This document shows positions 7,995 to 19,594 of a DNA stretch of 64,000 bases, one piece after another. The first letter of the stretch is position 1; every line of letters starts with the position of its first letter. The translations under genes were made by a program, and so were the position numbers. The notes beneath the pieces are model-generated. The model ran no database searches. It worked only from the letters and a program-made list of their open reading frames with translations, and was not told the origin of the DNA. Where the stretch lies: the IMG/VR virus record IMGVR_UViG_3300013093_000017, positions 62,001 to 126,000 of that record. One strand, written 5' to 3'.

Positions 7995-8060
7995 TCACTG
8001 TAATCTTAATTTAATATATGCGCACATAAATAAGAGTATCATATTGAAAGCGAGATTACA

Positions 8061-9122
8061 ATGGCCACCAAAATTTTATTCATTCTTAAACGCCGAGAAG
8101 ATTATAATGAAATAACACACAGCCCTAAAGGATTATCCACGGGGCTGTTCAACTCGGCAAGTTTCATGGAACAGATGCTAAACGAATCGGGCATCGAATC
8201 TGTATTAGAAGTAGCGATTGACAATAACTGTATTGATCGATTAGTCCAAAAACATAAACCTTCACATGTTATTATTGAAGCACTTTGGGTAGTACCACAA
8301 AAGTTTGCTGTCCTAACTAAACTACATCCCGGAGTAAAGTGGATCATTCGCTTGCATAGTGAAATGCCGTTTATGGCTGGCGAAGGAATGGCCATGGATT
8401 GGTTAGGTGATTACGTTACCTATCCGCAGATTACTATTGGCGTAAATGCTCCACGCATGTTAGACGAAGTACAGACATTCTTAAGACTTAGCCAGTCTTG
8501 GTCAAATACCACTACAAAAAATCGTGTGGTGTATATGCCAAATTATTACCCAAAAGATTATAAAACAAAGACATTCGATCATAATAAAGAATATATAGAC
8601 ATTGCCTGTTTTGGTGCAGTTCGCCCATTAAAGAATCATATGGTGCAAGCAGTGGCAGCAGTAAAGTTTGCCGATCAACTGAACAAAAAATTAAGATTCC
8701 ATATTAATGTGGGACGTATTGAAATGAAAGGTGATCCAGTATTAAACAATCTACGTGGATTTTTCCAACACCTGTATGATCGTGGACATCAAATGATCGG
8801 ACACGAGTGGCGTCAGCGTGATGGATTCTTAGATCTATGCAGCGAAATGGATATTGGCCTACAATGTAATTTCAGCGAAACATTTAATATAGTATCAGCT
8901 GACCTAATCAGTCAAGGTGTGCCAGTAGTGGGCAGTTACGAAATACCGTGGGCAACTAGATGGTTTAATGCTCGTCCAGCAGAAAGCGATGAGATAGCCA
9001 GTAAAATGATGTTAACATATCAATTTCCAGATATTAATGTTTGGTTAAATCAACGTAATTTAGATAAATACACTAATAAAACCCGTAGGATATGGGAACA
9101 ACTGTTTAATGGAGTAATATAA
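8061..9122 (+). CDS. Putative GT-B fold glycosyltransferase
   Basis: FGAVRPLKNH and SETFNIVSADLISQGVPVV resemble GT4-type motifs. Confidence 0.65.
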   Translation: MATKILFILKRREDYNEITHSPKGLSTGLFNSASFMEQMLNESGIESVLEVAIDNNCIDRLVQKHKPSHVIIEALWVVPQKFAVLTKLHPGVKWIIRLHSEMPFMAGEGMAMDWLGDYVTYPQITIGVNAPRMLDEVQTFLRLSQSWSNTTTKNRVVYMPNYYPKDYKTKTFDHNKEYIDIACFGAVRPLKNHMVQAVAAVKFADQLNKKLRFHINVGRIEMKGDPVLNNLRGFFQHLYDRGHQMIGHEWRQRDGFLDLCSEMDIGLQCNFSETFNIVSADLISQGVPVVGSYEIPWATRWFNARPAESDEIASKMMLTYQFPDINVWLNQRNLDKYTNKTRRIWEQLFNGVI

Positions 9123-9313
9123 TGAGCAAATTTAAAGTAAGAAAAGACACGTGGGTAGAAGGCATATTGCAAGTTGAAGAGGTATTATTTGATCTATTCG
9201 AAGATGCTGTAGCACACGTTAAGCACAGTCATCACCATGGTGCTAAAGTAATCGATGAAGAAGGTCGCGTGATCCATCGCGAAGGTCCAGCTACTGGCGA
9301 ATCGTACGCTTAA
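9122..9313 (+). CDS. Hypothetical protein
   Basis: 63 aa, SD GGAG, coupled to the upstream stop. Confidence 0.7.
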   Translation: MSKFKVRKDTWVEGILQVEEVLFDLFEDAVAHVKHSHHHGAKVIDEEGRVIHREGPATGESYA

Positions 9314-9334
9314 TAAAATAATTGAAAATAATGG

Positions 9335-9363
9335 TTGACAGGCGATTATTTTCAATATATAAT
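9335..9363 (+). promoter_or_regulatory. sigma70 promoter P1 of tRNA array leader
   Basis: TTGACA-17-TATAAT, followed by AGCTACATA. Confidence 0.85.
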
Positions 9364-9428
9364 AGCTACATATTTAGAGATTGATAAATAATCTTATAAA
9401 TAAAAGATAAATAAATTATCAAAAGAGG

Positions 9429-9457
9429 TTGACAACAACTAAATTTGATAATATAAT
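9429..9457 (+). promoter_or_regulatory. sigma70 promoter P2 of tRNA array leader
   Basis: TTGACA-17-TATAAT, followed by the same AGCTACATA as P1. Confidence 0.85.
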
Positions 9458-9494
9458 AGCTACATAGTAAGAAATTAATTAAAGGGAAAAGACA

Positions 9495-9644
9495 ATGTTT
9501 ACAACGCAACATCAATTTAGAGGATCGAAACAAGTGCAACTACTTGCCACGATGTCTTATTGGTCAGCGATTGAGACATTTGGCGGCAATGATCGCACAC
9601 CGAGTAATTGTATTAGGGTTCGAGAGGGATGGGATGGTTATTAA
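9495..9644 (+). CDS. Putative attenuator leader peptide (49 aa, all 20 amino acids)
   Basis: SD AAGGGA; MFTTQHQFRGSKQVQLLATMSYWSAIETFGGNDRTPSNCIRVREGWDGY*; its 3' end overlaps the antiterminator. Confidence 0.7.
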   Translation: MFTTQHQFRGSKQVQLLATMSYWSAIETFGGNDRTPSNCIRVREGWDGY

Positions 9645-9679
9645 GTAAATAACAAAATCCAAAACTTTAAGAACCCTAA
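9613..9679 (+). promoter_or_regulatory. Putative antiterminator hairpin
   Basis: TTAGGGTTC (9613-9621) pairs with GAACCCTAA (9671-9679); inner helices GGAT/ATCC and GTTATT/AATAAC. Confidence 0.7.
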
Positions 9680-9707
9680 GATCGAAAGACTTAGGGTTTT
9701 TTGTTTT
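9672..9707 (+). terminator. Rho-independent terminator (attenuator)
   Basis: AACCCTAAG-a-TC-GAAA-GA-CTTAGGGTT followed by a T-rich tract. Confidence 0.85.
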
Positions 9708-9810
9708 ATGTGTCTAGGAAACGAGGTCCAAGACAAGGCACATTAAAGATTGTATGTTGAACTGGCGGACAAGTGGATGGCATTTCCTTTTGTGGAAAGA
9801 AAATACTTGT

Positions 9811-9898
9811 TATAATAAAGCATTCTAACACGGGTAGGTAACGTGTGGGGAAGAAATTGCCCCTAGAGTGCTTTATTATACGCATTCATATGAGTGCG
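9811..9898 (+). ncRNA. Structured RNA: long closed stem plus adjacent hairpin
   Basis: TATAATAAAGCATTCTA...TAGAGTGCTTTATTATA, then CGCATTCATATGAGTGCG. Confidence 0.45.
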
Positions 9899-9905
9899 TT
9901 AACAG

Positions 9906-9986
9906 ATTGCAGTATTTTAGGTGGGCACCTACAGCGGCGGCAGCCGTCAAGATCGCAACTTGAGAGGTTCGAGTCCTCACTGCAAT
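9906..9986 (+). ncRNA. tRNA-like RNA without canonical anticodon arm or CCA
   Basis: ATTGCAGT/ACTGCAAT closing stem, T-arm GAGG-TTCGAGT-CCTC, three internal hairpins. Confidence 0.5.
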
Positions 9987-10038
9987 ATTTTAATACGGCC
10001 TTTGTCGCTAGCATAGCTGGTGCTCAAAGGTTCTTTAT

Positions 10039-10116
10039 CGGAGTGTATGTCAGTCTGGCTAGACGGCCTGCTTTGGGAGCAGGAGGCCGTAGGTTCGAAT
10101 CCTACCATTCCGACCA
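10039..10116 (+). tRNA. tRNA-Pro(TGG)
   Basis: Cloverleaf, CCTGC-TT-TGG-GA-GCAGG, CCA. Confidence 0.93.
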
Positions 10117-10120
10117 ATAT

Positions 10121-10196
10121 GTCCCTATCATCTAGCGGCCTAGGATACTGCCCTTTCACGGCAGGTACACGAGTTCGAATCTCGTTAGGGACACCA
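10121..10196 (+). tRNA. tRNA-Glu(TTC)
   Basis: CTGCC-CT-TTC-AC-GGCAG, CCA. Confidence 0.93.
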
Positions 10197-10202
10197 AATA
10201 AT

Positions 10203-10289
10203 GAGTGTTCGGGGACGTGGGAGTGTCTCGGCTGGCTGTAACCCAGTTGCCTTATGGCTTAGTAGGTTCGAATCCTACAACATTCACCA
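10203..10289 (+). tRNA. tRNA-Tyr(GTA)
   Basis: GCTGG-CT-GTA-AC-CCAGT, long variable arm, CCA. Confidence 0.88.
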
Positions 10290-10295
10290 AGTTAT

Positions 10296-10390
10296 GTCGC
10301 AGTTCCAGTTACACTAATCTCTCAGTTCAAAGCTGTTAGTGTGTAAAGGACACGAGAAAGTCAACTTCTTCTGGGTAGACTGTGACGCCA
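10296..10390 (+). ncRNA. CCA-terminated non-cloverleaf structured RNA
   Basis: GTCGCAGT/ACTGTGAC stem followed by G-CCA; internal TTACACTAA/TTAGTGTGTAA helix. Confidence 0.4.
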
Positions 10391-10394
10391 TTTT

Positions 10395-10504
10395 TAGACT
10401 CGTGTAGGAACTTTGAGATCGTATAACCTCTTGAAACTGGATAAGTGAGAGCCAGGCCAGTCAAAAACACGTACGGTAAATGCTGTGCAACTCGGCAGAG
10501 TCTA
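10395..10504 (+). ncRNA. Structured RNA with T-arm-like 3' hairpin
   Basis: TAGACTC/GAGTCTA closing stem; GCTG-TGCAACT-CGGC hairpin just before the 3' strand. Confidence 0.35.
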
Positions 10505-10619
10505 TTTTATAGTAGTAAATTTTTAGGAGAAACCAAAGTGAAGAGTACTAAACTTTAGTGTCATCTTTAATCCCATGTATGATTAAGGATAGGCACGTTA
10601 AACATCTTTATACATATAT

Positions 10620-10694
10620 GGGGGTATAATTCAATGGCTAGAATATCCGGCTTTTACCCGGACTATCAGAGTTCAAATCTCTGTGCCCTCACCA
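10620..10694 (+). tRNA. tRNA-Lys(TTT)
   Basis: TCCGG-CT-TTT-AC-CCGGA, CCA. Confidence 0.92.
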
Positions 10695-10699
10695 ACATA

Positions 10700-11581
10700 T
10701 TAAATTACATTCAGTGAGTGCAATTTAGTATGTTGTAATAATTTTAACAGTTGTTTTATTTTACTACCTGCTTGGTATTCGTCGTATGATATTCTAAATA
10801 CAGTAATGCCTAAATGGGTTTGTATATATGCATCACGCAGTTCGTCTGCTTCTTTATGTTTAGGCTTTTCGTGTTGTTTACCGTCAAGTTCTACTATAAG
10901 ATTTACGGTAGGGAAATAATAATCAACAAAATACCATTTACCTGTTAGATGATTTTTAATAAAGTGTTCGTCAATGTACTTGGTGGATATTTTATTATCA
11001 ACTAACCATCGTTCAAATGATTGTTCTAAATAAGATTTTTTATCTCTTCTGTAATTGCTTCTGCGATTGGTTTTGATGCGTTTAATTATCTTATCGGAAA
11101 TTAAAGATGACTTACATTCATCTGAACAGGTTTTGCGGTGACTGTGTTTAATAACAGTACCACATTGATGACAAAAAGATACTTTTGAATATTGCGGCAA
11201 TGGGTTTTCGTTATTATATTTTTGGACGCCCTTTGAGATTTTTTGTTTTCGGTTGAGGTCTATAGCAATACCTTTTCTATCTTTATTGTAATACACAGCA
11301 GAGCAAGATGTAGAACAAAATTTGTTATGTCTTCTTTTGTATTCGAGTGCTAAATTACATTGAATACATTTAGACGGAGACTGGATATAATCTAATTTTA
11401 TAGATTTTAATTTTTTATTATTTGCCTTAACAGCAGATATTTGTCCAAGTTTGCCATTTTTAAGATTTCGTAGTTTGCCTTCTTTGGTATGAGAAATAAG
11501 ATAATGAGAATGTATTCCTTTAGAGGTTTTGGGTTCTCGACAAACTACGCAGGAGCAAGGATAAGATGTTTTATTAGTCAT
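10700..11581 (-). CDS. Free-standing homing endonuclease (Zn-finger N-terminus, DUF559/Vsr-like nuclease)
   Basis: Several CxxC pairs; YFVDYYFP..LIVELDGKQH..D..RD; antisense inside the tRNA array; TATAAATA upstream on the minus strand. Confidence 0.75.
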   Translation of the reverse strand: MTNKTSYPCSCVVCREPKTSKGIHSHYLISHTKEGKLRNLKNGKLGQISAVKANNKKLKSIKLDYIQSPSKCIQCNLALEYKRRHNKFCSTSCSAVYYNKDRKGIAIDLNRKQKISKGVQKYNNENPLPQYSKVSFCHQCGTVIKHSHRKTCSDECKSSLISDKIIKRIKTNRRSNYRRDKKSYLEQSFERWLVDNKISTKYIDEHFIKNHLTGKWYFVDYYFPTVNLIVELDGKQHEKPKHKEADELRDAYIQTHLGITVFRISYDEYQAGSKIKQLLKLLQHTKLHSLNVI

Positions 11582-11628
11582 ACAAGTATTTATACATCAA
11601 AACGAATTTCTCCTACCAAATTGAAATA

Positions 11629-11720
11629 CCATACAAAAACACATTCTTCAAAGAATACAGGGTTCAATTCCCGGCCGTTGATCACGGAACTGCCAAGGTG
11701 GTGAGTGTATTCCTATATGG
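11629..11720 (+). ncRNA. Structured RNA with internal T-arm-like hairpin
   Basis: CCATA..ACATTC / GAGTGT..TATGG closing stem; GGG-TTCAATT-CCC. Confidence 0.35.
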
Positions 11721-11726
11721 TTCAAT

Positions 11727-11801
11727 GTTGTCTATAGTGTAGTGGTAGCACCCAATCCTGTGAAGATTGTAGTATGAGATCGATACTCATTAGACAACCC
11801 A
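11727..11801 (+). tRNA. tRNA-His(GTG)
   Basis: G-1 8-bp acceptor, CAATC-CT-GTG-AA-GATTG, atypical T-loop ATCGATA, CCA. Confidence 0.88.
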
Positions 11802-11808
11802 AAGTTTT

Positions 11809-11883
11809 GCCTCGTTCATATAGTGGTTATTATGTCCGCCTGTCTAGTGGAACATAGGGGTTCGATTCCCCTACGAGGCGCCA
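11809..11883 (+). tRNA. tRNA-Asp(GTC)
   Basis: TCCGC-CT-GTC-TA-GTGGA, CCA. Confidence 0.9.
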
Positions 11884-11892
11884 AATTAAAGG

Positions 11893-11921
11893 TTGACGTG
11901 AAAAATCGTTGACTATATAAT
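11893..11921 (+). promoter_or_regulatory. Internal sigma70 promoter in tRNA array
   Basis: TTGACG-17-TATAAT. Confidence 0.75.
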
Positions 11922-11943
11922 AGTAACAGTTAGAAAGATCAAT

Positions 11944-12016
11944 TGCGGTAGAAGTGTAGTGGCGCATGATAGTCTCATAAGCTATCGGGGTGGTTCGATT
12001 CCAACGTCCGCATCCA
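11944..12016 (+). tRNA. tRNA-Met(CAT), imperfect stems
   Basis: ATAGT-CT-CAT-AA-GCTAT, TTCGA loop, CCA; mismatches in acceptor and T stems. Confidence 0.7.
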
Positions 12017-12032
12017 TAATTAGGAGAAGTAA

Positions 12033-12194
12033 ATGGCAGTTAAGAAAGCAAATCCAATGCAGACACGCACTGGTAAGACACGGTTAGGTCCATTGAATTT
12101 AACACAGTTACAAACTATGTTAGAAAAGACTTCTAAGAAAAAGATCAAGGCGCAGATTCAAAAGCGCATTGCAGAATTAGAAGCACGTAAGTAA
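12033..12194 (+). CDS. Small basic hypothetical protein (53 aa), not in ORF track
   Basis: SD AGGAGA; MAVKKANPMQTRTGKTRLGPLNLTQLQTMLEKTSKKKIKAQIQKRIAELEARK. Confidence 0.75.
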   Translation: MAVKKANPMQTRTGKTRLGPLNLTQLQTMLEKTSKKKIKAQIQKRIAELEARK

Positions 12195-12202
12195 AGTTTT
12201 AC

Positions 12203-12277
12203 GCCCAGTTAGCAGAGTGGTAATGCGCCTCACTTGTAATGAGGATATCGGGAGTTCGATTCTCTCACTGGGCACCA
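12203..12277 (+). tRNA. tRNA-Thr(TGT)
   Basis: CCTCA-CT-TGT-AA-TGAGG, CCA. Confidence 0.93.
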
Positions 12278-12284
12278 GTATTAA

Positions 12285-12369
12285 GCCCCTTTGGTGGAAT
12301 TGGTAGACACCGCGGTCTTAGAAGCCGCCGACGAAAGTCATGAGAGTTCGAGTCTCTTGGGGGGCACCA
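12285..12369 (+). tRNA. tRNA-Leu(TAG)
   Basis: GCGGT-CT-TAG-AA-GCCGC, long variable arm, CCA. Confidence 0.92.
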
Positions 12370-12379
12370 AAAGTTTTAT

Positions 12380-12453
12380 GCGGGATTAGTTTAATGGTAG
12401 AACTGCAGATTTCCAATCTCCTGGTGAGGGTTCGATTCCCTTATCCCGCTCCA
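12380..12453 (+). tRNA. tRNA-Gly(TCC)
   Basis: GCAGA-TT-TCC-AA-TCTCC, CCA. Confidence 0.9.
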
Positions 12454-12458
12454 GAACA

Positions 12459-12669
12459 CAAGGTTTACACTTTTACCTTATAGAAAGTGGGTCATTGCTA
12501 ATACCAGAACGGCAGGGTGCGCACGATGGTCTAGACCATACCACAAGTCCCACTATCCGGGAGCCTTGAAAGTATCGTGGGAGTTTTATTGTTTCTTACC
12601 ATATGGAAACAGTTGGACAGGGTAACTACTCAGTTTTGGGCTCGGTTGTGCGAGTAGCAAAACACTGAT
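12459..12669 (+). ncRNA. Candidate structured ncRNA(s) between tRNA-Gly and tRNA-Ala
   Basis: CAAGGTT/AGCCTTG multibranch with CACTTTT/AGAAAGTG, TGGTCTAGACCA and TCCC/GGGA hairpins; no credible ORF. Confidence 0.35.
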
Positions 12670-12671
12670 TC

Positions 12672-12746
12672 GGGCTGTTAGTATACTGGGTATTATTCCT
12701 GCCTTGCACGTAGGAGAAGACGGATCGTAACCGTCACGGTCCACCA
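12672..12746 (+). tRNA. tRNA-Ala(TGC)
   Basis: G3:U70 pair, CCTGC-CT-TGC-AC-GTAGG, T-loop ATCGTAA, CCA. Confidence 0.9.
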
Positions 12747-12752
12747 TATTAT

Positions 12753-12829
12753 AGAGGATTAGCTCAGTTGGTACGAGCAACTGCCTTACAAGCAGAAGGT
12801 CACTGGTTCGACCCCAGTATCCTCTACCA
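12753..12829 (+). tRNA. tRNA-Val(TAC)
   Basis: CTGC-CT-TAC-AA-GCAG, CCA. Confidence 0.93.
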
Positions 12830-12836
12830 GTTCTAT

Positions 12837-12915
12837 TCCGCAGAATCCGAGCTAGGCGCACGGACTTGACTGTTAATCAATGATTAGCTGGGTTCGAATC
12901 CCAGATGCGGAGCCA
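12837..12915 (+). tRNA. tRNA-Asn(GTT)
   Basis: TTGA-CT-GTT-AA-TCAA, CCA. Confidence 0.88.
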
Positions 12916-12919
12916 TATT

Positions 12920-13020
12920 TGCAGAGCGTGGGCTAGTCTAGCGTCGACGTACACTCCGAGTTAGTTGCAACTAACAACAGATTGTGAAAACTAGACAACG
13001 AGGTTCGATTCCTTACTGCA
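12920..13020 (+). ncRNA. tRNA-like RNA, same acceptor/T-arm module as 9906-9986
   Basis: TGCAG...GAGG-TTCGATT-CCTT-ACTGCA; internal GTCTAG/CTAGAC and GTTAGTTGCAACTAAC helices. Confidence 0.5.
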
Positions 13021-13029
13021 TCTTAAATT

Positions 13030-13490
13030 TATCGTCGATAGCCGGAGCAAATCCTTTGAGCGGCTTGAGCATAAGCAAGGCACCGAGACGCAGGTGTATA
13101 TTTCCGGTGAAAGTCCGGACGGTAATAGATTTTATCTCCCTCCGTAAAGGATGGAACAGTGAGCTCTCAGTTCCCTGCAAGGTAGTAGTAGACAAGAAGC
13201 AAACAGGCGTACTAGTCATACGCAATGTGCTGATTAGGTCGCTATGCAACCTCTGACAATAGGTCATGACTGGCCAACGATAGGAGACACTTGTAAAGCT
13301 CTCACAGTTTAACCGGTGGTGAAAATCCACAGGGGAGGCCAGTTTTGGGATAGACGGCAAGATCTTAAACGAGTCCTAAGTAGCGTCAGTAGTACGAAAC
13401 ACATTTTGCGCGAAATATAGATGAGCTCTCTTGTTCGAGACAATCCAGCAAGGCCTTTGGAGAAAAGGATAGCTGGGCGCCCAAAAACCC
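13030..13490 (+). ncRNA. Candidate large structured ncRNA (~460 nt; GOLLD/ROOL-type context)
   Basis: GC-richer non-coding block with T-loop hairpins CCGG-TGAAAGT-CCGG and GTGG-TGAAAAT-CCAC and long-range helices CTGGCC/GGCCAG and TTTTGGG/CCCAAAA. Confidence 0.55.
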
Positions 13491-13496
13491 TTTTAT

Positions 13497-13571
13497 GCTT
13501 CGGTAGCTCAGTGGTAGAGCAATCGGTTGATAACCGATAGGCCGGTGGATCGTTCCCACCTCGAAGCACCA
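13497..13571 (+). tRNA. tRNA-Ile(GAT)
   Basis: ATCGG-TT-GAT-AA-CCGAT, T-loop ATCGTTC, CCA. Confidence 0.9.
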
Positions 13572-13579
13572 TTTATATG

Positions 13580-13608
13580 TTGACAGACGGATAAACATCT
13601 GTTATACT
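13580..13608 (+). promoter_or_regulatory. Internal sigma70 promoter
   Basis: TTGACA-17-TATACT. Confidence 0.75.
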
Positions 13609-13775
13609 ATGTTTTAAGATTTGGAAGAAAGCCGGTACATTATGTATTCGAGGTTAGGAGAGACCGGCAAACCGTCCGATTAGAGTAGGTAATACTGCGG
13701 TTCGACTCCGCCGATTGAATTACTGTATGATTCTGCACATACCTAACAGGCCTGTATTGGCCGCAGATCGTTTAT

Positions 13776-13864
13776 GGAAGGTTATGCAATCTGGGATATT
13801 GCCGCGCACTTGAAATGCGCTGGAGCCTACGGGCCAGGAGTTCGATTCTGCCATCCTTCCGCCA
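13776..13864 (+). tRNA. tRNA-Ser(TGA)
   Basis: GCGCA-CT-TGA-AA-TGCGC, long variable arm, G73-CCA. Confidence 0.85.
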
Positions 13865-13876
13865 GTTTGAAAATAC

Positions 13877-13967
13877 GGAGAGTGGGCCGGACGGTAAGGC
13901 ACCACCCTGCTAAGGTGTACACTTGTGATGAACAGGTGACAGGGTTCGACTCCCTGACTCTCCGCCA
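13877..13967 (+). tRNA. tRNA-Ser(GCT)
   Basis: CACC-CT-GCT-AA-GGTG, long variable arm, CCA. Confidence 0.92.
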
Positions 13968-13972
13968 AATAC

Positions 13973-14008
13973 CCGGTGTTAGTTAAATGGATATAACAGG
14001 GGATTTCG
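13973..14008 (+). pseudogene. 5' half of a tRNA-Arg-like gene, truncated in the anticodon loop
   Basis: CCGGTGT-TA-GTTA-AATGGATA-TAAC-A-GGGGA-TTTC, then an abrupt switch to TATAAATA. Confidence 0.65.
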
Positions 14009-14022
14009 TATAAATAAACAAT

Positions 14023-14099
14023 GCGGTTGTAGCTCAGTGGATTAGAGCAACGAGCTTCTACCTCGTTGGCCGGGGGTTCGAGTCCCTCCAGCCGCACCA
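14023..14099 (+). tRNA. tRNA-Arg(TCT)
   Basis: ACGAG-CT-TCT-AC-CTCGT, CCA. Confidence 0.93.
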
Positions 14100-14114
14100 T
14101 TTAATAGAATACTT

Positions 14115-14798
14115 ATGTATCAAAAATTAACTAACTGTAAATATTGCAATGTTTCATTACTTGAAATGACTACTTCTCGGCGAGCAAATCACTCTCGATG
14201 GTGCAAACTAAATCCTAAGCATACTGAATATATAAATGCATTAGAAATTTCTAGAGAGAATATAGTTAATCGACGTAATCAATTTATGAAGGCTAAAGAG
14301 GATGGAAGGCCGATTCCGCCAGGAACACAGACCGGAAAACCAGGTACAATGTTAGGTAAGAAGCATTCTTCTAAAACTAAACAGCGTCAAAAAGAAAAGG
14401 CACTAGCAAGTCCTCATAGAAGATTAGTTAGATCTATTCGGAAATATACAAAAAAGGACGGAACTATAGTTAGTTTAGATTCGTTCTGGGAAGAAGCATT
14501 AGCTATTCGGCTTGATACTATAGGTGTTAACTGGATAAGACCGTCGCCTATTAAATGGATAGACAATGATAACGTAACTCATAATTACTTTCCAGATTTC
14601 TATCTACCAGAGTTTGATTTATATTTAGATCCAAAAAACCCGTATGCTGTCAAAGCTCAACAAGTTAAGATACAGTGTTTAAAACAGCAAATACAAAACC
14701 TTATAATTATAACAAGTTTAGAGGATTGCAACAATTATATTCCTCAACCAGTATTGCCCTATAGTTCAATGGAAGAACGGCTCCCTTATAAGGAGTGA
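14115..14798 (+). CDS. Free-standing homing endonuclease (NUMOD3-like repeat, PD-(D/E)XK nuclease)
   Basis: GKKHSSKTKQRQKE, SFWEE, YFPDFYLPEFDLYLDPK; its 3' end overlaps tRNA-Ile(TAT). Confidence 0.75.
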   Translation: MYQKLTNCKYCNVSLLEMTTSRRANHSRWCKLNPKHTEYINALEISRENIVNRRNQFMKAKEDGRPIPPGTQTGKPGTMLGKKHSSKTKQRQKEKALASPHRRLVRSIRKYTKKDGTIVSLDSFWEEALAIRLDTIGVNWIRPSPIKWIDNDNVTHNYFPDFYLPEFDLYLDPKNPYAVKAQQVKIQCLKQQIQNLIIITSLEDCNNYIPQPVLPYSSMEERLPYKE

Positions 14799-14846
14799 GT
14801 GCTAGATAAGCCGCTAATGTAGGTTCGAGTCCTACTAGGGGTACCA
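14755..14846 (+). tRNA. tRNA-Ile(TAT) with long variable arm
   Basis: GCTCC-CT-TAT-AA-GGAGT, ~20 nt variable arm, CCA; top of acceptor stem imperfect. Confidence 0.75.
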
Positions 14847-14848
14847 AT

Positions 14849-14923
14849 GCTGATGTAGCGTAGAGGTAGCGCAACGCCTTGGTAAGGCGTAGGTCGTGGG
14901 TTCAACTCCCATCATCAGCACCA
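14849..14923 (+). tRNA. tRNA-Thr(GGT)
   Basis: ACGCC-TT-GGT-AA-GGCGT, CCA. Confidence 0.92.
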
Positions 14924-14942
14924 GCAATACAGTAAGATCAAT

Positions 14943-14972
14943 TGGCTCATGGTGTAGTGGTAGCACAACTCA
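14943..14972 (+). pseudogene. 5' fragment of a tRNA-Gln-like gene
   Basis: TGGCTCA-TG-GTGT-AGTGGTA-GCAC-A-ACTCA; ends before the anticodon loop. Confidence 0.6.
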
Positions 14973-15012
14973 AAAAAATCCTTTATGTTGCTAAATACAG
15001 TAAGGAGATAAT

Positions 15013-15573
15013 ATGTTAGTTACTATTATAGAATACATGAACCAGACGAGAGAAGAAAGACGCTCTCGATTAAAGTTAGATGAACCATGCGATGAGCGCG
15101 GATTAGTGTACAGTTATCATTTAACTGGGCTATTAGCGTACTTAACAAACACAAGTATACCTAAAAAAGGTGATAACGCTATTGTGTGTCATGGATGTAA
15201 CAACGCAAAATGTTCAAACCCAAATCATTTATATTGGGGATCTTATAAGGATAATCATACGGATCAGGTTGAAAATGGAACATGGGATAGTCCGTATGCT
15301 AGGGCTAAGAAAAAATACAGTACTGTTGAGATGAATGAGATATACTCAAACAATGCCAAAGGTAATAAAGGTAATAAACAACCTAGATCCGAAGAGCATA
15401 AAAGAAAAATATCTGAGTCAATGAAAAAAGTTCAGCAAGAACTAAATCCTAATTTAGGAAAAGTAAGAAACAAAGTAGAATGCCCTCATTGTGGAAAGCA
15501 AGGTGCTATGAATACAATGAGCCGATGGCATTTTGATAATTGTCTTAATAGGCGTGTGGTGAAGATGGCTTAA
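15013..15573 (+). CDS. Free-standing HNH homing endonuclease with NUMOD3-like repeat and Zn ribbon
   Basis: VCHGCNNAKCSNPNHLYWGSYKDN, RSEEHKRKISESMK, CPHCGK; its 3' end overlaps tRNA-Gln. Confidence 0.8.
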   Translation: MLVTIIEYMNQTREERRSRLKLDEPCDERGLVYSYHLTGLLAYLTNTSIPKKGDNAIVCHGCNNAKCSNPNHLYWGSYKDNHTDQVENGTWDSPYARAKKKYSTVEMNEIYSNNAKGNKGNKQPRSEEHKRKISESMKKVQQELNPNLGKVRNKVECPHCGKQGAMNTMSRWHFDNCLNRRVVKMA

Positions 15574-15627
15574 CACACTGGATTTTGATTCCAGCATTCC
15601 TAGGTTCGAATCCTAGCACGCCTGCCA
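15550..15627 (+). tRNA. tRNA-Gln(TTG)
   Basis: CTGGA-TT-TTG-AT-TCCAG, CCA. Confidence 0.92.
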
Positions 15628-15747
15628 GAACAGTCCGGGAACAGCTCTCCTTTCGTAAGAAAGTGTAACTGACTATAGCTGGGATTTACCAGTGAACTTA
15701 CAGGACGCTGTAAGGTACGGGCATACAGGAGGATAACTCCAATCTAT

Positions 15748-15821
15748 TCCGGTGTAGTATAATGGCAGTGCGACGGTCTCCAAAACCGTTAGTGGGGGTT
15801 CGATTCCCTCCACCGGAGCCA
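15748..15821 (+). tRNA. tRNA-Trp(CCA)
   Basis: ACGGT-CT-CCA-AA-ACCGT, CCA. Confidence 0.93.
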
Positions 15822-15830
15822 AACAATGTG

Positions 15831-15859
15831 TTGACTTTTAGTTAAGTTGATAGTATAAT
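15831..15859 (+). promoter_or_regulatory. sigma70 promoter
   Basis: TTGACT-17-TATAAT. Confidence 0.75.
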
Positions 15860-15886
15860 GTGCTTTTATTTGAAATGGAGCATGAA

Positions 15887-16351
15887 ATGTCAAAAGTTAT
15901 TAAATCAGAGTATGTTGAAGCAGCCATGGAACAATTAGATAGTGCGGCTAAATTACTCAAAACAGCCTACACCAATCCAAACAAAAATCTTGTGTTAATA
16001 TTAGACATGATTGATGATATTTGGGGGCAATTAGAATTGCTAGCTGATACACAGTACGACAAAGAAAATCCAGGTAAAGAAATGACGCAGGCTCAATATG
16101 ACACTGAGCACAGTGAGCGGGTGGCTAGGATTAAAGCCCTACAAGAAGTTACCATTACCAAAGTAGACAAGGCCACATTCAAAGCCATTAGTGATGATTT
16201 ATACACAGCAATTGGCAATGTCAGTGGCAAATACAATCTGTCTATTGCCTTTCCGTTATCCAGTTTCTCATTCCGTGCCTATGATTCGGAGAATCCCGAG
16301 CAGTATTGGCCACTAGGTAGAGAGTTTGATACAGAAATAAATCCATTATAG
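15887..16351 (+). CDS. Hypothetical protein
   Basis: ORF 15860-16351; likely start ATG 15887 after SD GGAG. Confidence 0.7.
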   Translation: MSKVIKSEYVEAAMEQLDSAAKLLKTAYTNPNKNLVLILDMIDDIWGQLELLADTQYDKENPGKEMTQAQYDTEHSERVARIKALQEVTITKVDKATFKAISDDLYTAIGNVSGKYNLSIAFPLSSFSFRAYDSENPEQYWPLGREFDTEINPL

Positions 16352-16352
16352 G

Positions 16353-16381
16353 TTGACAGGTACCATATGCTCCTGTATTAT
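16353..16381 (+). promoter_or_regulatory. sigma70 promoter
   Basis: TTGACA-17-TATTAT. Confidence 0.65.
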
Positions 16382-16409
16382 TAATGAATAGTCAAAAGGA
16401 CAAAAGAAT

Positions 16410-16979
16410 ATGAACGTTACATTACGTAAAGCAAGTGCGTTACAGAACGCAATCAACGACACAATCAAAGGCATTCAGCTTAAAGTAGCTGTAAACCTAA
16501 GTGAGTTCCAAGATGCAGAAACAGTAATTTCTAAATCTCGCCAAGCATTGTTAAACAATGTTGATCGCAAGGTAGCACTAACCAAGGCATTGTATGCAAT
16601 TCGCGCCTCAGTAGGTGCAGCAAACAACGCCTCAGTAGATGCACTGTTGGCACAGGTAGCACAGGTTGAAAAAACAATCCAAATCTACACAAACTTAGCT
16701 GAAACAGAAGTGCGTGAAGATGCCACAGTTATTGCAGGTAAGTTGGATAAGATTAAGAACCGCACAGCAGATGCTCGTCCAAGTTACTACGGACACAGTG
16801 ACGAAGTAAACACCAGTGTATTAACACAAGATGATATTGAATCTTTCCGAGGTTTCATTGCACTGGCAAAGAAAAACAAACAGACTTTGCAGGATCAAAT
16901 CCTTGAAGCAAACGTTCGCACTGAAATCACTTTAGATGCAGACACAGTAGCAACACTAACAGCAGAAAAATTGCTGTAA
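16410..16979 (+). CDS. Helical protein, possibly DIP1984-like family
   Basis: Coiled-coil pattern; C-terminal LQDQILEANVRTEITL resembles the DIP1984-type ending (family call tentative). Confidence 0.6.
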   Translation: MNVTLRKASALQNAINDTIKGIQLKVAVNLSEFQDAETVISKSRQALLNNVDRKVALTKALYAIRASVGAANNASVDALLAQVAQVEKTIQIYTNLAETEVREDATVIAGKLDKIKNRTADARPSYYGHSDEVNTSVLTQDDIESFRGFIALAKKNKQTLQDQILEANVRTEITLDADTVATLTAEKLL

Positions 16980-17021
16980 TAGTTTTTGGTGGTTTGGCTC
17001 TAGGGCTAAAATCACCCAGAT

Positions 17022-17249
17022 GTGAGAAAGAGACGAGGATTGGCAAGGACATCATACATCGTATGATTCCATACTTAATGAGCAATCGCCTTGAAAAGCG
17101 ATCGTGTTTGCGTGTTCCGGTTATTATATAAATTTGTTTATTGCCACCGTTGAAATATGCAAGCCCCTGTGTTTTGAACATTGTCTTTTGTCAGCGGATA
17201 TTATAATAATATCTTTTGTCATTTGCTGTGCCATTTACTTACTTTCTCA
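17022..17249 (+). ncRNA. Candidate ncRNA downstream of 16410-16979
   Basis: TGAGAAAG/CTTTCTCA long-range closure; repeated (A/T)TTG motifs separated by short hairpins. Confidence 0.4.
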
Positions 17250-17261
17250 ATCTGTTTCTTC

Positions 17262-17339
17262 GCACACGTGGCTGAGTGGCCCAAAGCAGCGGCCTGCAAA
17301 GCCGTAAAACCGCCGGTTCAAATCCGGCCGTGTGCTCCA
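17262..17339 (+). tRNA. tRNA-Cys(GCA)
   Basis: GCGGC-CT-GCA-AA-GCCGT, U73-CCA. Confidence 0.92.
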
Positions 17340-17340
17340 T

Positions 17341-17416
17341 AGTAATGTAGCATAGTGGCTAATGCGGCACCTTCATACGGTGTATATCGTGAGTTCGAGT
17401 CTCACCATTACTACCA
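17341..17416 (+). tRNA. tRNA-Met/Ile2(CAT)
   Basis: GCACC-TT-CAT-AC-GGTGT, CCA. Confidence 0.88.
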
Positions 17417-17423
17417 GCTTTAC

Positions 17424-17532
17424 ATTAACAACCTTAACGCAACTCGGTACACGGATACCTGATCAGTGGGAGTGTTTGACATAGTCGGACCGCTGCAACA
17501 CTGTGGGTGGCAAAGCCGTGCTCGTTGTTAAT
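17424..17532 (+). ncRNA. Candidate small structured RNA
   Basis: ATTAACAAC/GTTGTTAAT closing stem with nested CACGG/CCGTG and CAGTG/CACTG helices. Confidence 0.4.
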
Positions 17533-17534
17533 TT

Positions 17535-17610
17535 GCCCTGTTAGTTCAACGGATTAGAATTAGAGTCTTCGAAACTCAGGATGGGGGTTCGATTCCCTCA
17601 CGGGGCACCA
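17535..17610 (+). tRNA. tRNA-Arg(TCG)
   Basis: GAGT-CT-TCG-AA-ACTC, CCA. Confidence 0.9.
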
Positions 17611-17660
17611 AACAAGTAATCGCATAATGTAGCGGAATACACTACGTTATGTAAATCAAT

Positions 17661-17736
17661 GCGGCTGTAGCTCAGTTGGTAGAGCGTCTGCTTGCCAAGC
17701 AGAAGGTCACGAGTTCGAGACTCGTTAGCCGCTCCA
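17661..17736 (+). tRNA. tRNA-Gly(GCC)
   Basis: TCTGC-TT-GCC-AA-GCAGA, CCA. Confidence 0.94.
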
Positions 17737-17746
17737 TTTATTTTGA

Positions 17747-17775
17747 TTGACAGTTGGTAATACCTATGCTATAAT
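17747..17775 (+). promoter_or_regulatory. sigma70 promoter
   Basis: TTGACA-17-TATAAT. Confidence 0.8.
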
Positions 17776-17799
17776 ATGCTTGTACAGTTAGGAAATGAT

Positions 17800-18105
17800 A
17801 TGAAACACTACGTATATGAACCAGGTATAAAGAAAATTGAAAAAGTATTACCGTATTCTGTGGCTGTTCCGCAGGGTTATAAAACTCACGCACAGGCCCT
17901 ATGCCAACGAATATTAGGCAAAAGATATTGTCGTTGGGATCCAAGATGGCGCAGAGTTAATAATTGGACAGTGAAAACCACTACCAGGTGGACAGTATAT
18001 GAAGATGCAGTTTGGCACTACAAAGATGGTATACTTTACTTCAAAGATGAAGCTAATACTAAAATGCTTACAATGGTATTATTAAGTAAAACCAAAAGGA
18101 GATAG
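17800..18105 (+). CDS. Hypothetical protein
   Basis: ORF 17776-18105; likely start 17800 after AGGA. Confidence 0.65.
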   Translation: MKHYVYEPGIKKIEKVLPYSVAVPQGYKTHAQALCQRILGKRYCRWDPRWRRVNNWTVKTTTRWTVYEDAVWHYKDGILYFKDEANTKMLTMVLLSKTKRR

Positions 18106-18109
18106 TACT

Positions 18110-18592
18110 ATGAAACCATGGATTGAAAACATCAGCTTAGAAGATGTAAAGAAAGGCTATCACCACGATGCTGGCGATAATTCTATGCTAATTCAAATCG
18201 TAGATCCTGGTGTAGAGTTTCCAACTCCTAAGTACAAGTTTAAGCGAGTATCACAGTACTTCTTCCTTGATGTAGAGGATAGAGATATTCCCGGTGCTAT
18301 ATTTGATGCGGCAATCACTGACGCAGACGCTATCGGTATTGCCGAAGATTTGAAATACGCATTGGCCAATAACATGAACGTAATTGTTCACTGTCATATG
18401 GGTGTGTGCCGTAGTGGTGCTGTAGCAGAAGTAGGTGTTATGTTAGGTTTCCAAGATACTGAAAAGTATCGTATTCCTAACACAATGGTCAAGCGTAAAC
18501 TTATGGAATACTTTGGTATGACATACACAGAGTCCGAGCTCCCTAAAGGGGCTTGGGCACTTGACGAAAATGGAATTAGACATTATTATTAA
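18110..18592 (+). CDS. Protein-tyrosine/dual-specificity phosphatase-like protein
   Basis: VHCHMGVCRS (CX5R) motif. Confidence 0.8.
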   Translation: MKPWIENISLEDVKKGYHHDAGDNSMLIQIVDPGVEFPTPKYKFKRVSQYFFLDVEDRDIPGAIFDAAITDADAIGIAEDLKYALANNMNVIVHCHMGVCRSGAVAEVGVMLGFQDTEKYRIPNTMVKRKLMEYFGMTYTESELPKGAWALDENGIRHYY

Positions 18593-18598
18593 GAATAT

Positions 18599-18674: not shown

Positions 18675-18690
18675 AACAAAGGAAATAGAT

Positions 18691-18858: not shown

Positions 18859-18860
18859 TC

Positions 18861-19593: not shown

Positions 19594-19594
19594 A

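What the first reader, a model, noticed from the sequence alone, without database searches (positions are those of the whole stretch)
9335..9707. Pan-amino-acid ribosome-dependent attenuator controlling a phage tRNA array
Seen: two perfect tandem sigma70 promoters, then a 49-codon ORF with an SD (9495-9644) missed by the ORF track. It encodes all 20 amino acids with 32 different codons. All four Ser codons differ (TCG, TCT, TCA, AGT), all four Arg codons differ (AGA, CGC, AGG, CGA), and GC-ending codons unusual for this AT-rich genome are frequent. Its last ~10 codons carry TTAGGGTTC, which pairs with GAACCCTAA, the 5' arm of the intrinsic terminator at 9672-9707, so the two hairpins are mutually exclusive. 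Downstream lie 26 tRNAs covering all 20 amino acids. Known: trp/his/pheST attenuators use this geometry but sense one amino acid through codon runs. Inference: a ribosome reaching the stop codon masks the antiterminator (array off); stalling at any earlier codon through starvation or tRNA cleavage frees it (array on). That would be a general sensor of tRNA depletion, for example by anticodon-nuclease defences. The leader also avoids TTA/TTG, matching the absence of a UUR-reading Leu tRNA in this array.
Basis: partly seen in the sequence, partly recalled or inferred. Interest (0 to 1): 0.95.

Follow-up and report, generated by a model that had tools for sequence, protein, structure and literature searches.

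The report
All-amino-acid leader before phage tRNAs
A short gene whose forty-odd codons spell out every one of the 20 amino acids sits, with a switchable stop signal for transcription, in front of the tRNA genes of hundreds of uncultured lake phages; this is the design expected of a sensor that raises tRNA production when any tRNA runs short.

Summary
They are two 12/12 sigma-70 promoters, a 49-codon ORF (9495-9644) using all 20 amino acids, and an intrinsic terminator whose 5' arm can also pair with codons 40-43 of the ORF. The element is not a one-off. I found 92 homologous loci, and 454 protein clusters, all unnamed, in phage and lake metagenome contigs. None occur in GenBank phages or in 185,579 prokaryote genomes. 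Nearly every locus has a consensus promoter, the ORF, a terminator, and a tRNA array 270-600 nt downstream. Of 162 unique peptides (36-56 aa), 129 contain all 20 amino acids and 31 lack one, usually Cys. Rare residues (His, Tyr, Met, Cys) move between positions instead of being lost. The residues themselves evolve almost neutrally (dN/dS 0.74). The antiterminator helix covaries (CG 24/UA 9 with no mismatch; GC 20/AU 10). It always lies where a ribosome at the stop codon would block it. A ribosome-dependent attenuator that senses shortage of any aminoacyl-tRNA is therefore the best explanation, but it has not been tested experimentally. In this genome the leader can govern only the first tRNA cluster.

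The parts
9335..9363 (+). Promoter P1: TTGACA, 17 nt, TATAAT
   Evidence: 12/12 consensus match. A second upstream promoter is also present in several relatives.
9395..9428 (+). A/T-rich tract upstream of P2, conserved as 'ATAAATAAA...' in relatives. A possible UP element.
   Evidence: Read. The function is inferred.
9429..9457 (+). Promoter P2: TTGACA, 17 nt, TATAAT. The predicted start of the transcript is near 9464.
   Evidence: 12/12 match. An 11-12/12 promoter sits at the same distance in 53 of 54 unique relatives. The 54th, L130, has its promoter further upstream.
9482..9487 (+). Shine-Dalgarno-like AAGGGA, 7 nt before the ATG
   Evidence: Close relatives have AAAGGAA at the same place. 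Six more distant relatives have the -10 box only 6-10 nt before the ATG, which would make the mRNA leaderless or nearly so.
9495..9644 (+). Leader ORF of 49 codons plus TAA. Codons 1-40 (9495-9614) already contain all 20 amino acids. Codons 41-49 encode RVREGWDGY.
   Evidence: The frame is open and starts with ATG in all 92 related loci. dN/dS is 0.74 in the N-terminal part and 0.02 in the RVREGWDG block.
9524..9553 (+). Hairpin inside the ORF: ATCG/CGAT enclosing CAAGTG/TACTTG
   Evidence: Present in the fold. A hairpin of different sequence sits at the same place in distant relatives.
9567..9596 (+). Conserved hairpin GCGATT/GATCGC (codons A-I ... D-R), ending 17 nt before region 2. A possible RNA polymerase pause hairpin.
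   Evidence: RNAalifold pairs 138-144 with 167-173, with only one-sided changes. The pause role is inferred.
9613..9626 (+). Region 2, the 5' strand of the antiterminator: core TTAGGGTTC (9613-9621) plus AGAG (9623-9626). These are codons 40-44.
   Evidence: Pairs 34-90 (CG 24, UA 9, none broken) and 37-85 (GC 20, AU 10, 3 broken). The duplex has dG -17.5 against -9.3 for shuffles.
9629..9660 (+). Small hairpin inside the antiterminator loop that holds the stop codon: GGAT/ATCC enclosing GGTTAT/ATAAC
   Evidence: Fold. The equivalent hairpin in distant relatives is GGGATG/CATTTC enclosing TTAAGT/ACTTAA.
9665..9679 (+). Region 3, the 3' strand of the antiterminator: CTTT (9665-9668) plus GAACCCTAA (9671-9679). 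Eight of its bases are also the terminator 5' arm.
9672..9707 (+). Intrinsic terminator: stem 9672-9680 / 9690-9698, 9-nt loop, then TTTTTTGTTTT
   Evidence: Hairpin dG is -14.7. The stem is kept in relatives with compensatory changes.
9708..10038 (+). Conserved structured spacer RNA between the terminator and the first tRNA. It contains no strong promoter.
   Evidence: Fold z -4.2. Alignment with relatives. No promoter of 10/12 or better. No Rfam hit.
10039..10694 (+). First tRNA cluster (Pro-UGG, Glu-UUC, Tyr-GUA, Lys-UUU). These are the genes that read-through from the leader can reach.
   Evidence: The next gene, 10700-11581, is on the minus strand.

Best explanation
The element is a ribosome-dependent transcription attenuator at the head of the phage's tRNA region. 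Its leader peptide is built to contain every amino acid instead of a run of one.

Proposed mechanism:
1. Very strong sigma-70 promoters make a leader RNA of about 240 nt.
2. A ribosome translates the 49-codon ORF while RNA polymerase moves on.
3. If elongation is smooth, the ribosome reaches the last codons and the stop codon. There it unwinds or covers region 2 (9613-9626). Region 3 then pairs with region 4, the terminator forms, and transcription ends at about 9702.
4. If the ribosome stalls earlier because any one aminoacyl-tRNA is scarce, or if the leader is not translated at all, region 2 pairs with region 3. The terminator cannot form, and polymerase reads on into the structured spacer RNA and the tRNA genes. 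In many relatives it reads into a small protein gene and then tRNA genes.

The outcome is negative feedback from the cell's decoding capacity onto phage tRNA supply.

Shown by sequence and comparison: the promoters, the ORF, the terminator, the alternative helix and its covariation, the maintained 20-amino-acid coverage, and the conserved position ahead of tRNA arrays.

Inferred: that the ORF is translated, that stalling selects the antiterminator, that the conserved hairpin at 9567-9596 synchronises polymerase and ribosome, and that the natural trigger is tRNA loss during infection or through host tRNA-cleaving defences.
For: (1) Family.
- The peptide query found 34 phage loci.
- A 25-nt pattern found 19 phage and 39 metagenome stretches and none in 185,579 prokaryote genomes.
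- A profile search found 454 unnamed protein clusters.

(2) Context.
- In 28 of 29 loci scanned, a plus-strand tRNA array lies downstream.
- In almost all loci with enough downstream sequence, the array starts 270-600 nt after the ORF.
- Only about 10 of about 43 unique elements in which a downstream tRNA was found have a 10/12 or better promoter in between, and the window has none.
- In many loci a gene with its own Shine-Dalgarno site starts 18 nt after the T run, so it can only be expressed by read-through.

(3) The ORF is coding but its peptide is largely unconstrained.
- The frame is open and starts with ATG in all 92 loci.
- In the RVREGWDG block every variable site is a third codon position. 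Gly uses GGA, GGC, GGG and GGT. dN/dS is 0.02 at dS 0.75.
- Upstream of that block dN/dS is 0.74 and differences are flat across codon positions.

(4) Coverage of all 20 amino acids.
- 43 of 54 unique peptides have all 20, and 10 lack only Cys.
- 78 of 96 database peptides of 56 aa or fewer have all 20.
- In the combined set, 129 of 162 have all 20 and 31 have 19.
- Nulls: 0.3-1.5% for proteome windows; 19% when resampling the family's own alignment columns; P<0.0005 in a simulation along the family tree at realistic rates.
- His is never missing (null 24%). Internal Met is missing in 2% (null 30%).
- When a single-copy residue is replaced in the nearest relative, the same residue is present elsewhere in 102 cases and absent in 27, of which 22 are Cys.
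- The part upstream of region 2 (37-46 aa) alone holds all 20 in 42 of 54 peptides.

(5) RNA switch.
- Two covarying pairs lie at synonymous sites, with at least 3 independent double changes on a tree.
- Other subfamilies pair with different sequences: AGGGTTTAAGT/ACTTAAACCCT, GGGATCTTAATTA/TAATTAAGAACCC, GGGGTCC/GGACCCC.
- The region 2:3 duplex is stronger than any other pairing of the ORF with region 3 in 56 of 56 elements (z -2.6 to -6.5).

(6) Geometry.
- The 3' end of region 2 lies from 3 nt past the start of the stop codon to 13 nt before it in every subfamily.
- With a ribosome footprint over the last ~12 codons, including the stop position, P(terminator) is 0.97-0.99 in the window, L031 and L004.
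- In L031, stalls at codons 1-37 give P(antiterminator) of 0.71-1.00.
Against: - No transcript, ribosome or reporter data exist. No public RNA run holds this DNA, and the laid contigs were uninformative.
- The equilibrium model is not uniform. In the window, stalls at P-site codons 1-6 and 23-28 favour the terminator. In L004 the antiterminator is weak even without a ribosome.
- Some residues needed for full coverage lie 1-3 codons before region 2, for example the window's only Cys at codon 39. A ribosome stalled there would itself mask region 2. If the last three codons before region 2 are excluded, coverage falls from 42 to 13 of 54.
- Cys is missing in about 20% of members.
- Leader composition does not track the tRNA set. 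Leaders without Cys sit beside arrays that have tRNA-Cys, and TTA/TTG use does not follow tRNA-Leu(UAA). The loci are truncated, so both tests are weak.
- The very strong amino-acid conservation of RVREGWDG is not required by the simple model.
- In this genome only four tRNAs and the spacer RNA lie in the unit.
- A minority of relatives have a consensus promoter after the terminator.
- Extra tRNA does not relieve amino-acid starvation, so the sensor makes sense only for loss of tRNA.
Confidence: 0.62

Rival explanations
1. The element is a nascent-peptide (arrest-peptide) switch. The conserved C-terminal peptide RVREGWDG acts inside the ribosome, as TnaC or SecM do, holding it at or near the stop codon in response to some ligand or factor. 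That, not tRNA supply, sets termination. The variable N-terminal part would be only a spacer.
For: - dN/dS is 0.02 in this block while synonymous sites vary freely.
- Variation has a perfect three-base period.
- A 9-codon mini-ORF ending in EGWDD, with its own promoter, lies beside the leader in L130.
- The motif ends exactly at the stop codon.
Against: - Whole subfamilies keep the promoter, the 20-amino-acid N-terminal part, the antiterminator, the terminator and the tRNA context but have other C-termini: EGLS, GDLS/N, GVRS, REDLM, RETKM, RRTVV (from a 1-nt deletion) and EGAGYA.
- It does not explain why all 20 amino acids are maintained upstream.
- It may be an added refinement, prolonging the ribosome's stay over region 2, and not an alternative.
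Confidence: 0.13
2. The element is an ordinary, highly expressed early gene for a small (about 45 aa) phage protein with its own terminator. The peptide acts in trans, and the pairing of its 3' end with the terminator arm only shapes mRNA stability. tRNA genes simply follow it.
For: - It has a strong promoter, a start signal and a terminator.
- Gene callers predict it in 454 clusters.
- The C-terminal block is conserved as protein.
- The leader peptide peTrpL is reported to act in trans (abstract of PMC7298713, listed; the paper was not read).
Against: - dN/dS is 0.74 with flat codon-position differences over four fifths of the peptide.
- Residues relocate instead of being conserved in place.
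- The helix that excludes the terminator covaries.
- Downstream genes without promoters need read-through.
- There is no Pfam, PHROG or Atlas relative.
Confidence: 0.1
3. The element is a structured non-coding leader, either riboswitch-like or a protein- or tRNA-binding RNA such as a T-box. The open frame would be incidental.
For: - Several helices are conserved with covariation: the 5' hairpin, GCGATT/GATCGC, the antiterminator and the terminator.
- The leader fold has z -3.85.
- Conserved nucleotide blocks coincide with paired segments.
Against: - No Rfam family, T-box included, reaches E<=1.
- The frame stays open from an ATG in all 92 loci despite about 50% peptide divergence.
- Variation in the conserved block has a three-base period.
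- The ATG sits at a fixed distance from a Shine-Dalgarno site or directly at the predicted transcript start.
- Selection for amino-acid coverage has no meaning for an untranslated RNA.
Confidence: 0.05

Closest known systems
Leader-peptide attenuators of enterobacterial amino-acid operons (trpL, hisL, pheL, leuL, thrL, ilvL)
   Same: - A short translated ORF in the leader.
- An intrinsic terminator before the regulated genes.
- An antiterminator whose 5' strand lies at the end of the ORF and whose 3' strand is the terminator's 5' arm.
- A ribosome that finishes the ORF favours termination; a stalled one favours read-through.
   Different: - There is no run of codons for one amino acid. Each of the 20 appears, most of them one to three times, and the coverage itself is what is conserved.
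- The ORF is two to three times longer.
- No region 1 that sequesters region 2 was found, so the absence of translation is predicted to give read-through, not super-attenuation.
- The regulated genes are tRNA genes of a phage, not biosynthetic enzymes.
pheST (pheM) attenuator of E. coli phenylalanyl-tRNA synthetase
   Same: Leader-peptide attenuation applied to a gene of the translation apparatus, reporting on the charging of a tRNA.
   Different: It senses Phe codons only and controls a protein-coding operon. It is chromosomal, not viral.
T-box riboswitches
   Same: A terminator/antiterminator switch in a leader that reads tRNA status and controls genes that restore decoding capacity.
   Different: - A T-box binds one uncharged tRNA directly through a specifier codon and the T-box sequence, without a ribosome.
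- Neither element is present here (no Rfam hit).
- This element has an ORF and could report on all tRNAs at once.
Arrest peptides acting at or near a stop codon (TnaC; also SecM, SpeFL)
   Same: In the largest subfamily the last eight residues are conserved as protein and end at the stop codon, which suggests action inside the ribosome.
   Different: - The motif is not universal in the family.
- No ligand is known.
- Termination here is intrinsic, not Rho-dependent as in tna.
Growth-rate and stringent control of bacterial rRNA/tRNA promoters (ppGpp/DksA)
   Same: Feedback from translation capacity to the synthesis of stable RNA.
   Different: That control acts on initiation at the promoter through a small molecule and host factors. 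This element would act after initiation, through the ribosome itself, and belongs to the phage.

Membership tests
Ribosome-mediated (leader-peptide) transcription attenuator | Short ORF with a start signal in the 5' leader | tested here: met
   ATG at 9495 with AAGGGA 7 nt upstream. The frame is open in all 92 loci. Relatives have a Shine-Dalgarno site or a start that is leaderless or nearly so. The conserved block shows a coding signature. Translation itself was not observed.
Ribosome-mediated (leader-peptide) transcription attenuator | Intrinsic terminator between the leader ORF and the regulated genes | tested here: met
   Stem 9672-9680/9690-9698 plus a T run. Present in every relative with compensatory changes. 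Hairpin dG is -13 to -16.
Ribosome-mediated (leader-peptide) transcription attenuator | Antiterminator helix that excludes the terminator, supported by covariation | tested here: met
   Pair 34-90: CG 24, UA 9, none broken. Pair 37-85: GC 20, AU 10, 3 broken. Other subfamilies pair with different sequences. The overlap with the terminator arm is 7-13 nt.
Ribosome-mediated (leader-peptide) transcription attenuator | The end of the ORF is placed so that a terminating ribosome blocks the antiterminator | tested here: met
   The 3' end of region 2 lies from 3 nt past the start of the stop codon to 13 nt before it in 56 of 56 elements. Folding with a ribosome mask gives P(terminator) >= 0.97. This is a model only.
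Ribosome-mediated (leader-peptide) transcription attenuator | Control codons: a run or strong enrichment of codons for the regulating amino acid | tested here: not met
   There is no run. All 20 amino acids are present, and this coverage is the conserved property.
Ribosome-mediated (leader-peptide) transcription attenuator | An upstream segment (region 1) that pairs with region 2, so that an untranslated leader terminates; also acts as a pause hairpin | tested here: inconclusive
   A conserved hairpin at 9567-9596 precedes region 2 but does not overlap it. The unmasked folds favour the antiterminator in the window (0.67) and L031 (1.00) but not in L004 (0.14).
Ribosome-mediated (leader-peptide) transcription attenuator | Read-through responds to the supply of charged tRNA | not testable with these tools
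   This needs reporter, in vitro coupled-system or Term-seq experiments. No RNA run holds this DNA.
T-box riboswitch | Stem I with a specifier loop, and the conserved T-box sequence in the antiterminator bulge | tested here: not met
   cmscan of 8000-25000 against Rfam 15 at E<=1 gave only tRNA-type hits.
Nascent-peptide arrest element (TnaC/SecM type) | A peptide motif conserved at the amino-acid level next to the stall site, in all members | tested here: inconclusive
   dN/dS is 0.02 for RVREGWDG in one large subfamily. At least seven other C-termini occur in members that keep everything else. Stalling cannot be tested here.
Any described protein or RNA family | A significant match to Pfam, PHROGs, Rfam or a named protein | tested here: not met
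   There are no hits in PHROGs, Pfam or Rfam. All 454 clusters are 'hypothetical' or unnamed. There is no match in GenBank phages.

The most novel reading that the evidence does not exclude
This would be the first known attenuator that reads the whole set of aminoacyl-tRNAs at once. Its leader ORF is kept by selection to contain every amino acid, so a shortage of any one tRNA stalls the ribosome and opens transcription of the phage's own tRNA genes. Examples of such shortage are decay of the host pool during infection and cleavage by tRNA-targeting defences. The element is widespread in an uncultured lineage of large freshwater phages.
Probability: 0.55. Interest if true: 0.92.

Novelty: new variant of a known kind. 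Interest (0 to 1): 0.87.

Why it matters
Phage tRNA genes have been known for more than 50 years, but their purpose and their regulation remain debated. Recent work links them to host tRNA-cleaving defences (PMC10264068, PMC11464382; abstracts only, listed). I found no description of how any phage decides when to make its tRNAs.

If this element works as inferred, four things follow:
- Phages would be shown to measure decoding capacity directly and to adjust tRNA supply by feedback.
- Leader-peptide attenuation would extend from a single-amino-acid sensor to a general sensor of elongation.
- It would give a compact natural part (about 240 nt) that reports shortage of any aminoacyl-tRNA.
- It would give a sequence signature, a short ORF with complete amino-acid coverage before a terminator, that can be searched for elsewhere.

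The evolutionary pattern is also unusual in itself. The peptide's individual residues drift almost neutrally while its composition is held fixed.

Tried and rejected
- GenBank phages: blastn of 9100-10100 matched only tRNA-Pro. tblastn with two leader peptides found nothing.
- Known families: PHROGs, Pfam and the ESM Atlas gave no family. Rfam gave none.
I replaced it with a DNA pattern.
- Transcript evidence: no RNA run holds the DNA. Laying four related runs at 80% likeness gave scraps, mainly tRNA. One 254-nt contig from a freshwater metatranscriptome spans 9667-9730. That shows a relative carrying a continuous terminator-to-spacer sequence, but not whether it is RNA.
- Rejected: an extended -10 promoter (TGTTATAAT near 9808) that could drive the tRNAs independently. 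That sequence is one strand of a conserved long-range helix, 9810-9823 with 9867-9881.
- Rejected: codon diversity and GC-ending codons as signals.
- Inconclusive because the loci are truncated: a match between the amino acids or codons of the leader and the tRNA genes of the same phage, tested for Cys and Leu UUR.
- Rejected: a T-box, and a relic duplicate of the terminator arm. Covariation argues against the relic.
Full report
**What is in the window.** The window is part of a 229,675-base virus record, about 65% complete and 38.6% G+C. It has no close relative among GenBank phages.
- Two promoters, at 9335-9363 and 9429-9457, each match TTGACA-17-TATAAT at 12 of 12 positions.
- An ATG ORF of 49 codons runs from 9495 to 9644, preceded by AAGGGA.
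- The ORF uses 20 amino acids and 32 codons.
- TTAGGGTTC at 9613-9621 is complementary to GAACCCTAA at 9671-9679.
- That second segment shares eight bases with the 5' arm of an intrinsic terminator: stem 9672-9680/9690-9698, then a T run to 9707.
- The minimum-energy fold of the whole leader uses the antiterminator (z -3.85). In the 3' part the two forms are nearly equal in energy.

**The element is a family.**
- The 49-residue peptide found 34 related loci in phage contigs.
- A 25-nt pattern from the end of the ORF found 19 phage and 39 metagenome stretches. It found none in one genome each of 185,579 prokaryote species.
- A profile search of 5.8 billion proteins found 454 clusters at E<=0.01. 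None has a name or a Pfam domain.
- The loci give 92 elements with 54 different peptides of 36-54 residues, about 48% identical on average.
- All but one have an 11-12/12 sigma-70 promoter at the expected distance. The exception, L130, has its promoter further upstream.
- In six members the -10 box ends only 6-10 nt before the ATG, which would give an mRNA that is leaderless or nearly so.

**Position ahead of tRNA genes.**
- In 28 of 29 phage loci scanned, a tRNA array on the same strand follows the ORF.
- Across all elements with enough sequence, the first tRNA starts 270-600 nt after the ORF.
- Only about 10 of about 43 unique elements in which a downstream tRNA was found have a 10/12 or better promoter between the terminator and the first tRNA. 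The window has none.
- In many relatives a conserved 42-59-residue helical protein gene with its own Shine-Dalgarno site starts 18 nt after the T run. It has no promoter of its own, so it needs read-through.
- In the window and its closest relatives that gene is replaced by a conserved, strongly structured RNA (9708-10038, z -4.2).

**Is the ORF coding?**
- The frame is open from an ATG in every locus. That includes the 58 stretches found with a DNA pattern, which places no condition on the upstream frame.
- In the block RVREGWDG the only variable nucleotides are the third positions of the Val, Arg, Glu and Gly codons, and Gly uses all four. dN/dS is 0.02 at dS 0.75.
- Upstream of that block the picture reverses. 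dN/dS is 0.74 and differences are nearly equal at the three codon positions.
- So most of the peptide is free to change residue by residue, yet the frame never breaks.

**Coverage of all 20 amino acids.** This is the key result.
- 43 of the 54 unique peptides contain all 20 amino acids. Ten lack only Cys, and one 36-residue member lacks three.
- Among the 96 best database clusters of 56 residues or fewer, 78 have all 20 and 17 lack one.
- In the combined set of 162 unique peptides, 129 have 20 and 31 have 19.

The expected frequencies are far lower.
- In windows of this genome's own long ORFs, all 20 appear in 0.3% (41 aa) to 1.5% (49 aa). Among its 183 small ATG ORFs, only this one has all 20.
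- A generous null that resamples each alignment column of the family itself gives 19%.
- A simulation along the family tree with those column frequencies never reached the observed 80% in 2000 trials at rates that approach the observed divergence. It gave P = 0.002-0.016 at unrealistically low rates.

Residues relocate instead of being lost.
- Cys occupies 18 alignment columns, His 13 and Met 12.
- His is never missing (null 24%). An internal Met is missing in 2% (null 30%).
- Between nearest relatives, a single-copy residue that has been replaced is found elsewhere in the peptide in 102 cases and is absent in 27, of which 22 are Cys.
- Examples: FMP...INL against FVP...INM; FRQHQF...LSNDR against FRQAQF...LHSDR; PSCW...EITRV against PSSW...PECSRV.

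The part of the peptide upstream of region 2, 37-46 residues, contains all 20 on its own in 42 of 54 members.

**The RNA switch.**
- In an alignment of 33 members with the RVREGWDG ending, the antiterminator has a 7-9 bp core plus a 4-bp extension.
- Two of its pairs covary. One is CG 24/UA 9 with none broken. The other is GC 20/AU 10 with three broken.
- Both changes on the ORF side are synonymous: Val GTY and Arg CGR.
- A tree of these short sequences needs at least three independent double changes for the first pair.
- Other subfamilies make the same helix with other sequences:
  - AGGGTTTAAGT with ACTTAAACCCT.
  - GGGATCTTAATTA with TAATTAAGAACCC, where one position runs through A-U, G-U and G-C among members.
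  - GGGGTCC with GGACCCC.
  - GGGGTTCGAAGTT with AACTTAGAACTCC.
- In 56 of 56 distinct elements, region 3 pairs better with the end of the ORF than with any other part of it (dG -12 to -25 kcal/mol; z -2.6 to -6.5 against shuffles). The partner overlaps the terminator arm by 7-13 nt.
- The terminator stem itself changes with compensation.
- RNAalifold on 20 distant members chooses the antiterminator form. It also finds a covarying 5' hairpin and a conserved hairpin, GCGATTA/TGATCGY, just before region 2.

**Geometry.**
- The distance from the 3' end of region 2 to the stop codon takes the values -3, -1, 6, 8, 10 or 13 nt in the different subfamilies. A ribosome with the stop codon in its A site therefore always lies on or against region 2.
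For P-site codons 36-49 of the window, P(terminator) is 0.88-0.99. It is 0.97-0.99 at the last codon in L031 and L004.
- In L031, stalls at codons 1-37 give P(antiterminator) of 0.71-1.00.
- In the window the picture is mixed. The antiterminator is favoured at codons 7-20 and 29-35. The terminator is favoured at 1-6 and 23-28.
- These are equilibrium estimates, not kinetics.

**Most likely mechanism.** The element is a two-state, ribosome-dependent attenuator. A ribosome that reaches the end of the leader prevents the 2:3 helix, so the terminator forms. A ribosome held up anywhere earlier, or no ribosome at all, leaves the 2:3 helix in place, and polymerase reads through into the spacer RNA or small gene and the tRNAs. 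Because the leader contains every amino acid, shortage of any aminoacyl-tRNA would raise read-through.
- Shown: the parts, their conservation, the covariation, the coverage constraint and the genomic context.
- Inferred: translation, the effect of stalling, a pause role for the hairpin at 9567-9596, and the physiological trigger.

The strong conservation of RVREGWDG is not needed by this model. It may slow termination and so keep the ribosome over region 2. It is absent from several subfamilies in which the stop codon lies inside region 2.

**What did not hold.**
- 32 distinct codons, the four different Ser and Arg codons and the GC-ending codons are what genome codon usage gives for this peptide.
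- Absence of TTA/TTG has P = 0.19, and 54 of 60 related leaders use these codons.
- I saw no link between the amino acids or Leu codons of a leader and the tRNA genes held for the same phage. The loci are truncated, so this is weak evidence.
- The window has 25 ARAGORN tRNAs plus one Rfam tRNA (CAT), serving 19 amino acids, with no tRNA-Asn.
- The array is interrupted by a minus-strand endonuclease-like gene (10700-11581) and has further consensus promoters. The leader can control only the first four tRNAs.

**Comparison with known systems.**
- The layout is that of the trp/his/phe/leu leader-peptide attenuators and of pheST. The element fails their defining feature of a run of control codons, lacks a demonstrated region 1, and regulates tRNA genes of a virus.
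- It is not a T-box.
- It shares with TnaC-type elements only a conserved C-terminal peptide, in one subfamily.
- Four full-text searches found no description of a leader peptide with all amino acids, or of attenuation of phage tRNA genes.
- Recent papers link phage tRNAs to tRNA-targeting defences (PMC10264068, PMC11464382; abstracts only). That gives a plausible setting.
- I class the element as a new variant of a known kind of mechanism.

**Limits.** Everything rests on sequence comparison and thermodynamic models. No host is known and no expression data exist.

Noticed in passing
window 9708-10038: A conserved, strongly structured RNA (z -4.2) lies between the leader terminator and tRNA-Pro. 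It has a hairpin at 9708-9743 with the loop GGAAACGAGGTCC, which is kept even in distant relatives. It also has a long-range helix, 9810-9823 with 9867-9881, around a variable insert. No Rfam family matches and its function is unknown.
   Followed up: partly
window 9907-9985: A tRNA-like element with a 7-bp acceptor stem (TTGCAGT/ACTGCAA) and a T arm (GAGGTTCGAGTCCTC) but irregular inner arms. Neither ARAGORN nor Rfam calls it. It is shared only with L002, L003 and L143.
   Followed up: partly
L028:468-617, L030:3222-3392, L004:486-611 and others: In many relatives a conserved 42-59-residue helical protein (motif TLTKEQ..KLIQDK..RA..Y) starts 18 nt after the leader terminator and precedes the tRNAs. 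It has no Pfam match.
   Followed up: partly
L130:7993-8022: A nine-codon mini-ORF, MQQLEGWDD, with its own consensus promoter lies just upstream of the main leader's promoter. It repeats the C-terminal motif of the leader peptides.
   Followed up: no
L035:1166-1597: ARAGORN calls a phage-borne tmRNA gene about 1.4 kb upstream of the leader in one relative.
   Followed up: no
window 10700-11581 (minus strand): A DUF559/PvuRts1I-like endonuclease gene sits inside the tRNA region on the opposite strand. The same gene occurs in relative L173. It looks like a homing-type insertion that splits the array.
   Followed up: no
window 23405-23499 and 11945-12012: ARAGORN calls an odd 95-nt tRNA with an undetermined two-base anticodon. 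Only Rfam finds an extra tRNA with anticodon CAT, directly after the promoter at 11893. No tRNA-Asn was found anywhere in the record.
   Followed up: partly
window 21753-23045 and 58828-61098: Auxiliary genes in the phage: an S-adenosylhomocysteine hydrolase and a ClpB-like double AAA+ ATPase.
   Followed up: no
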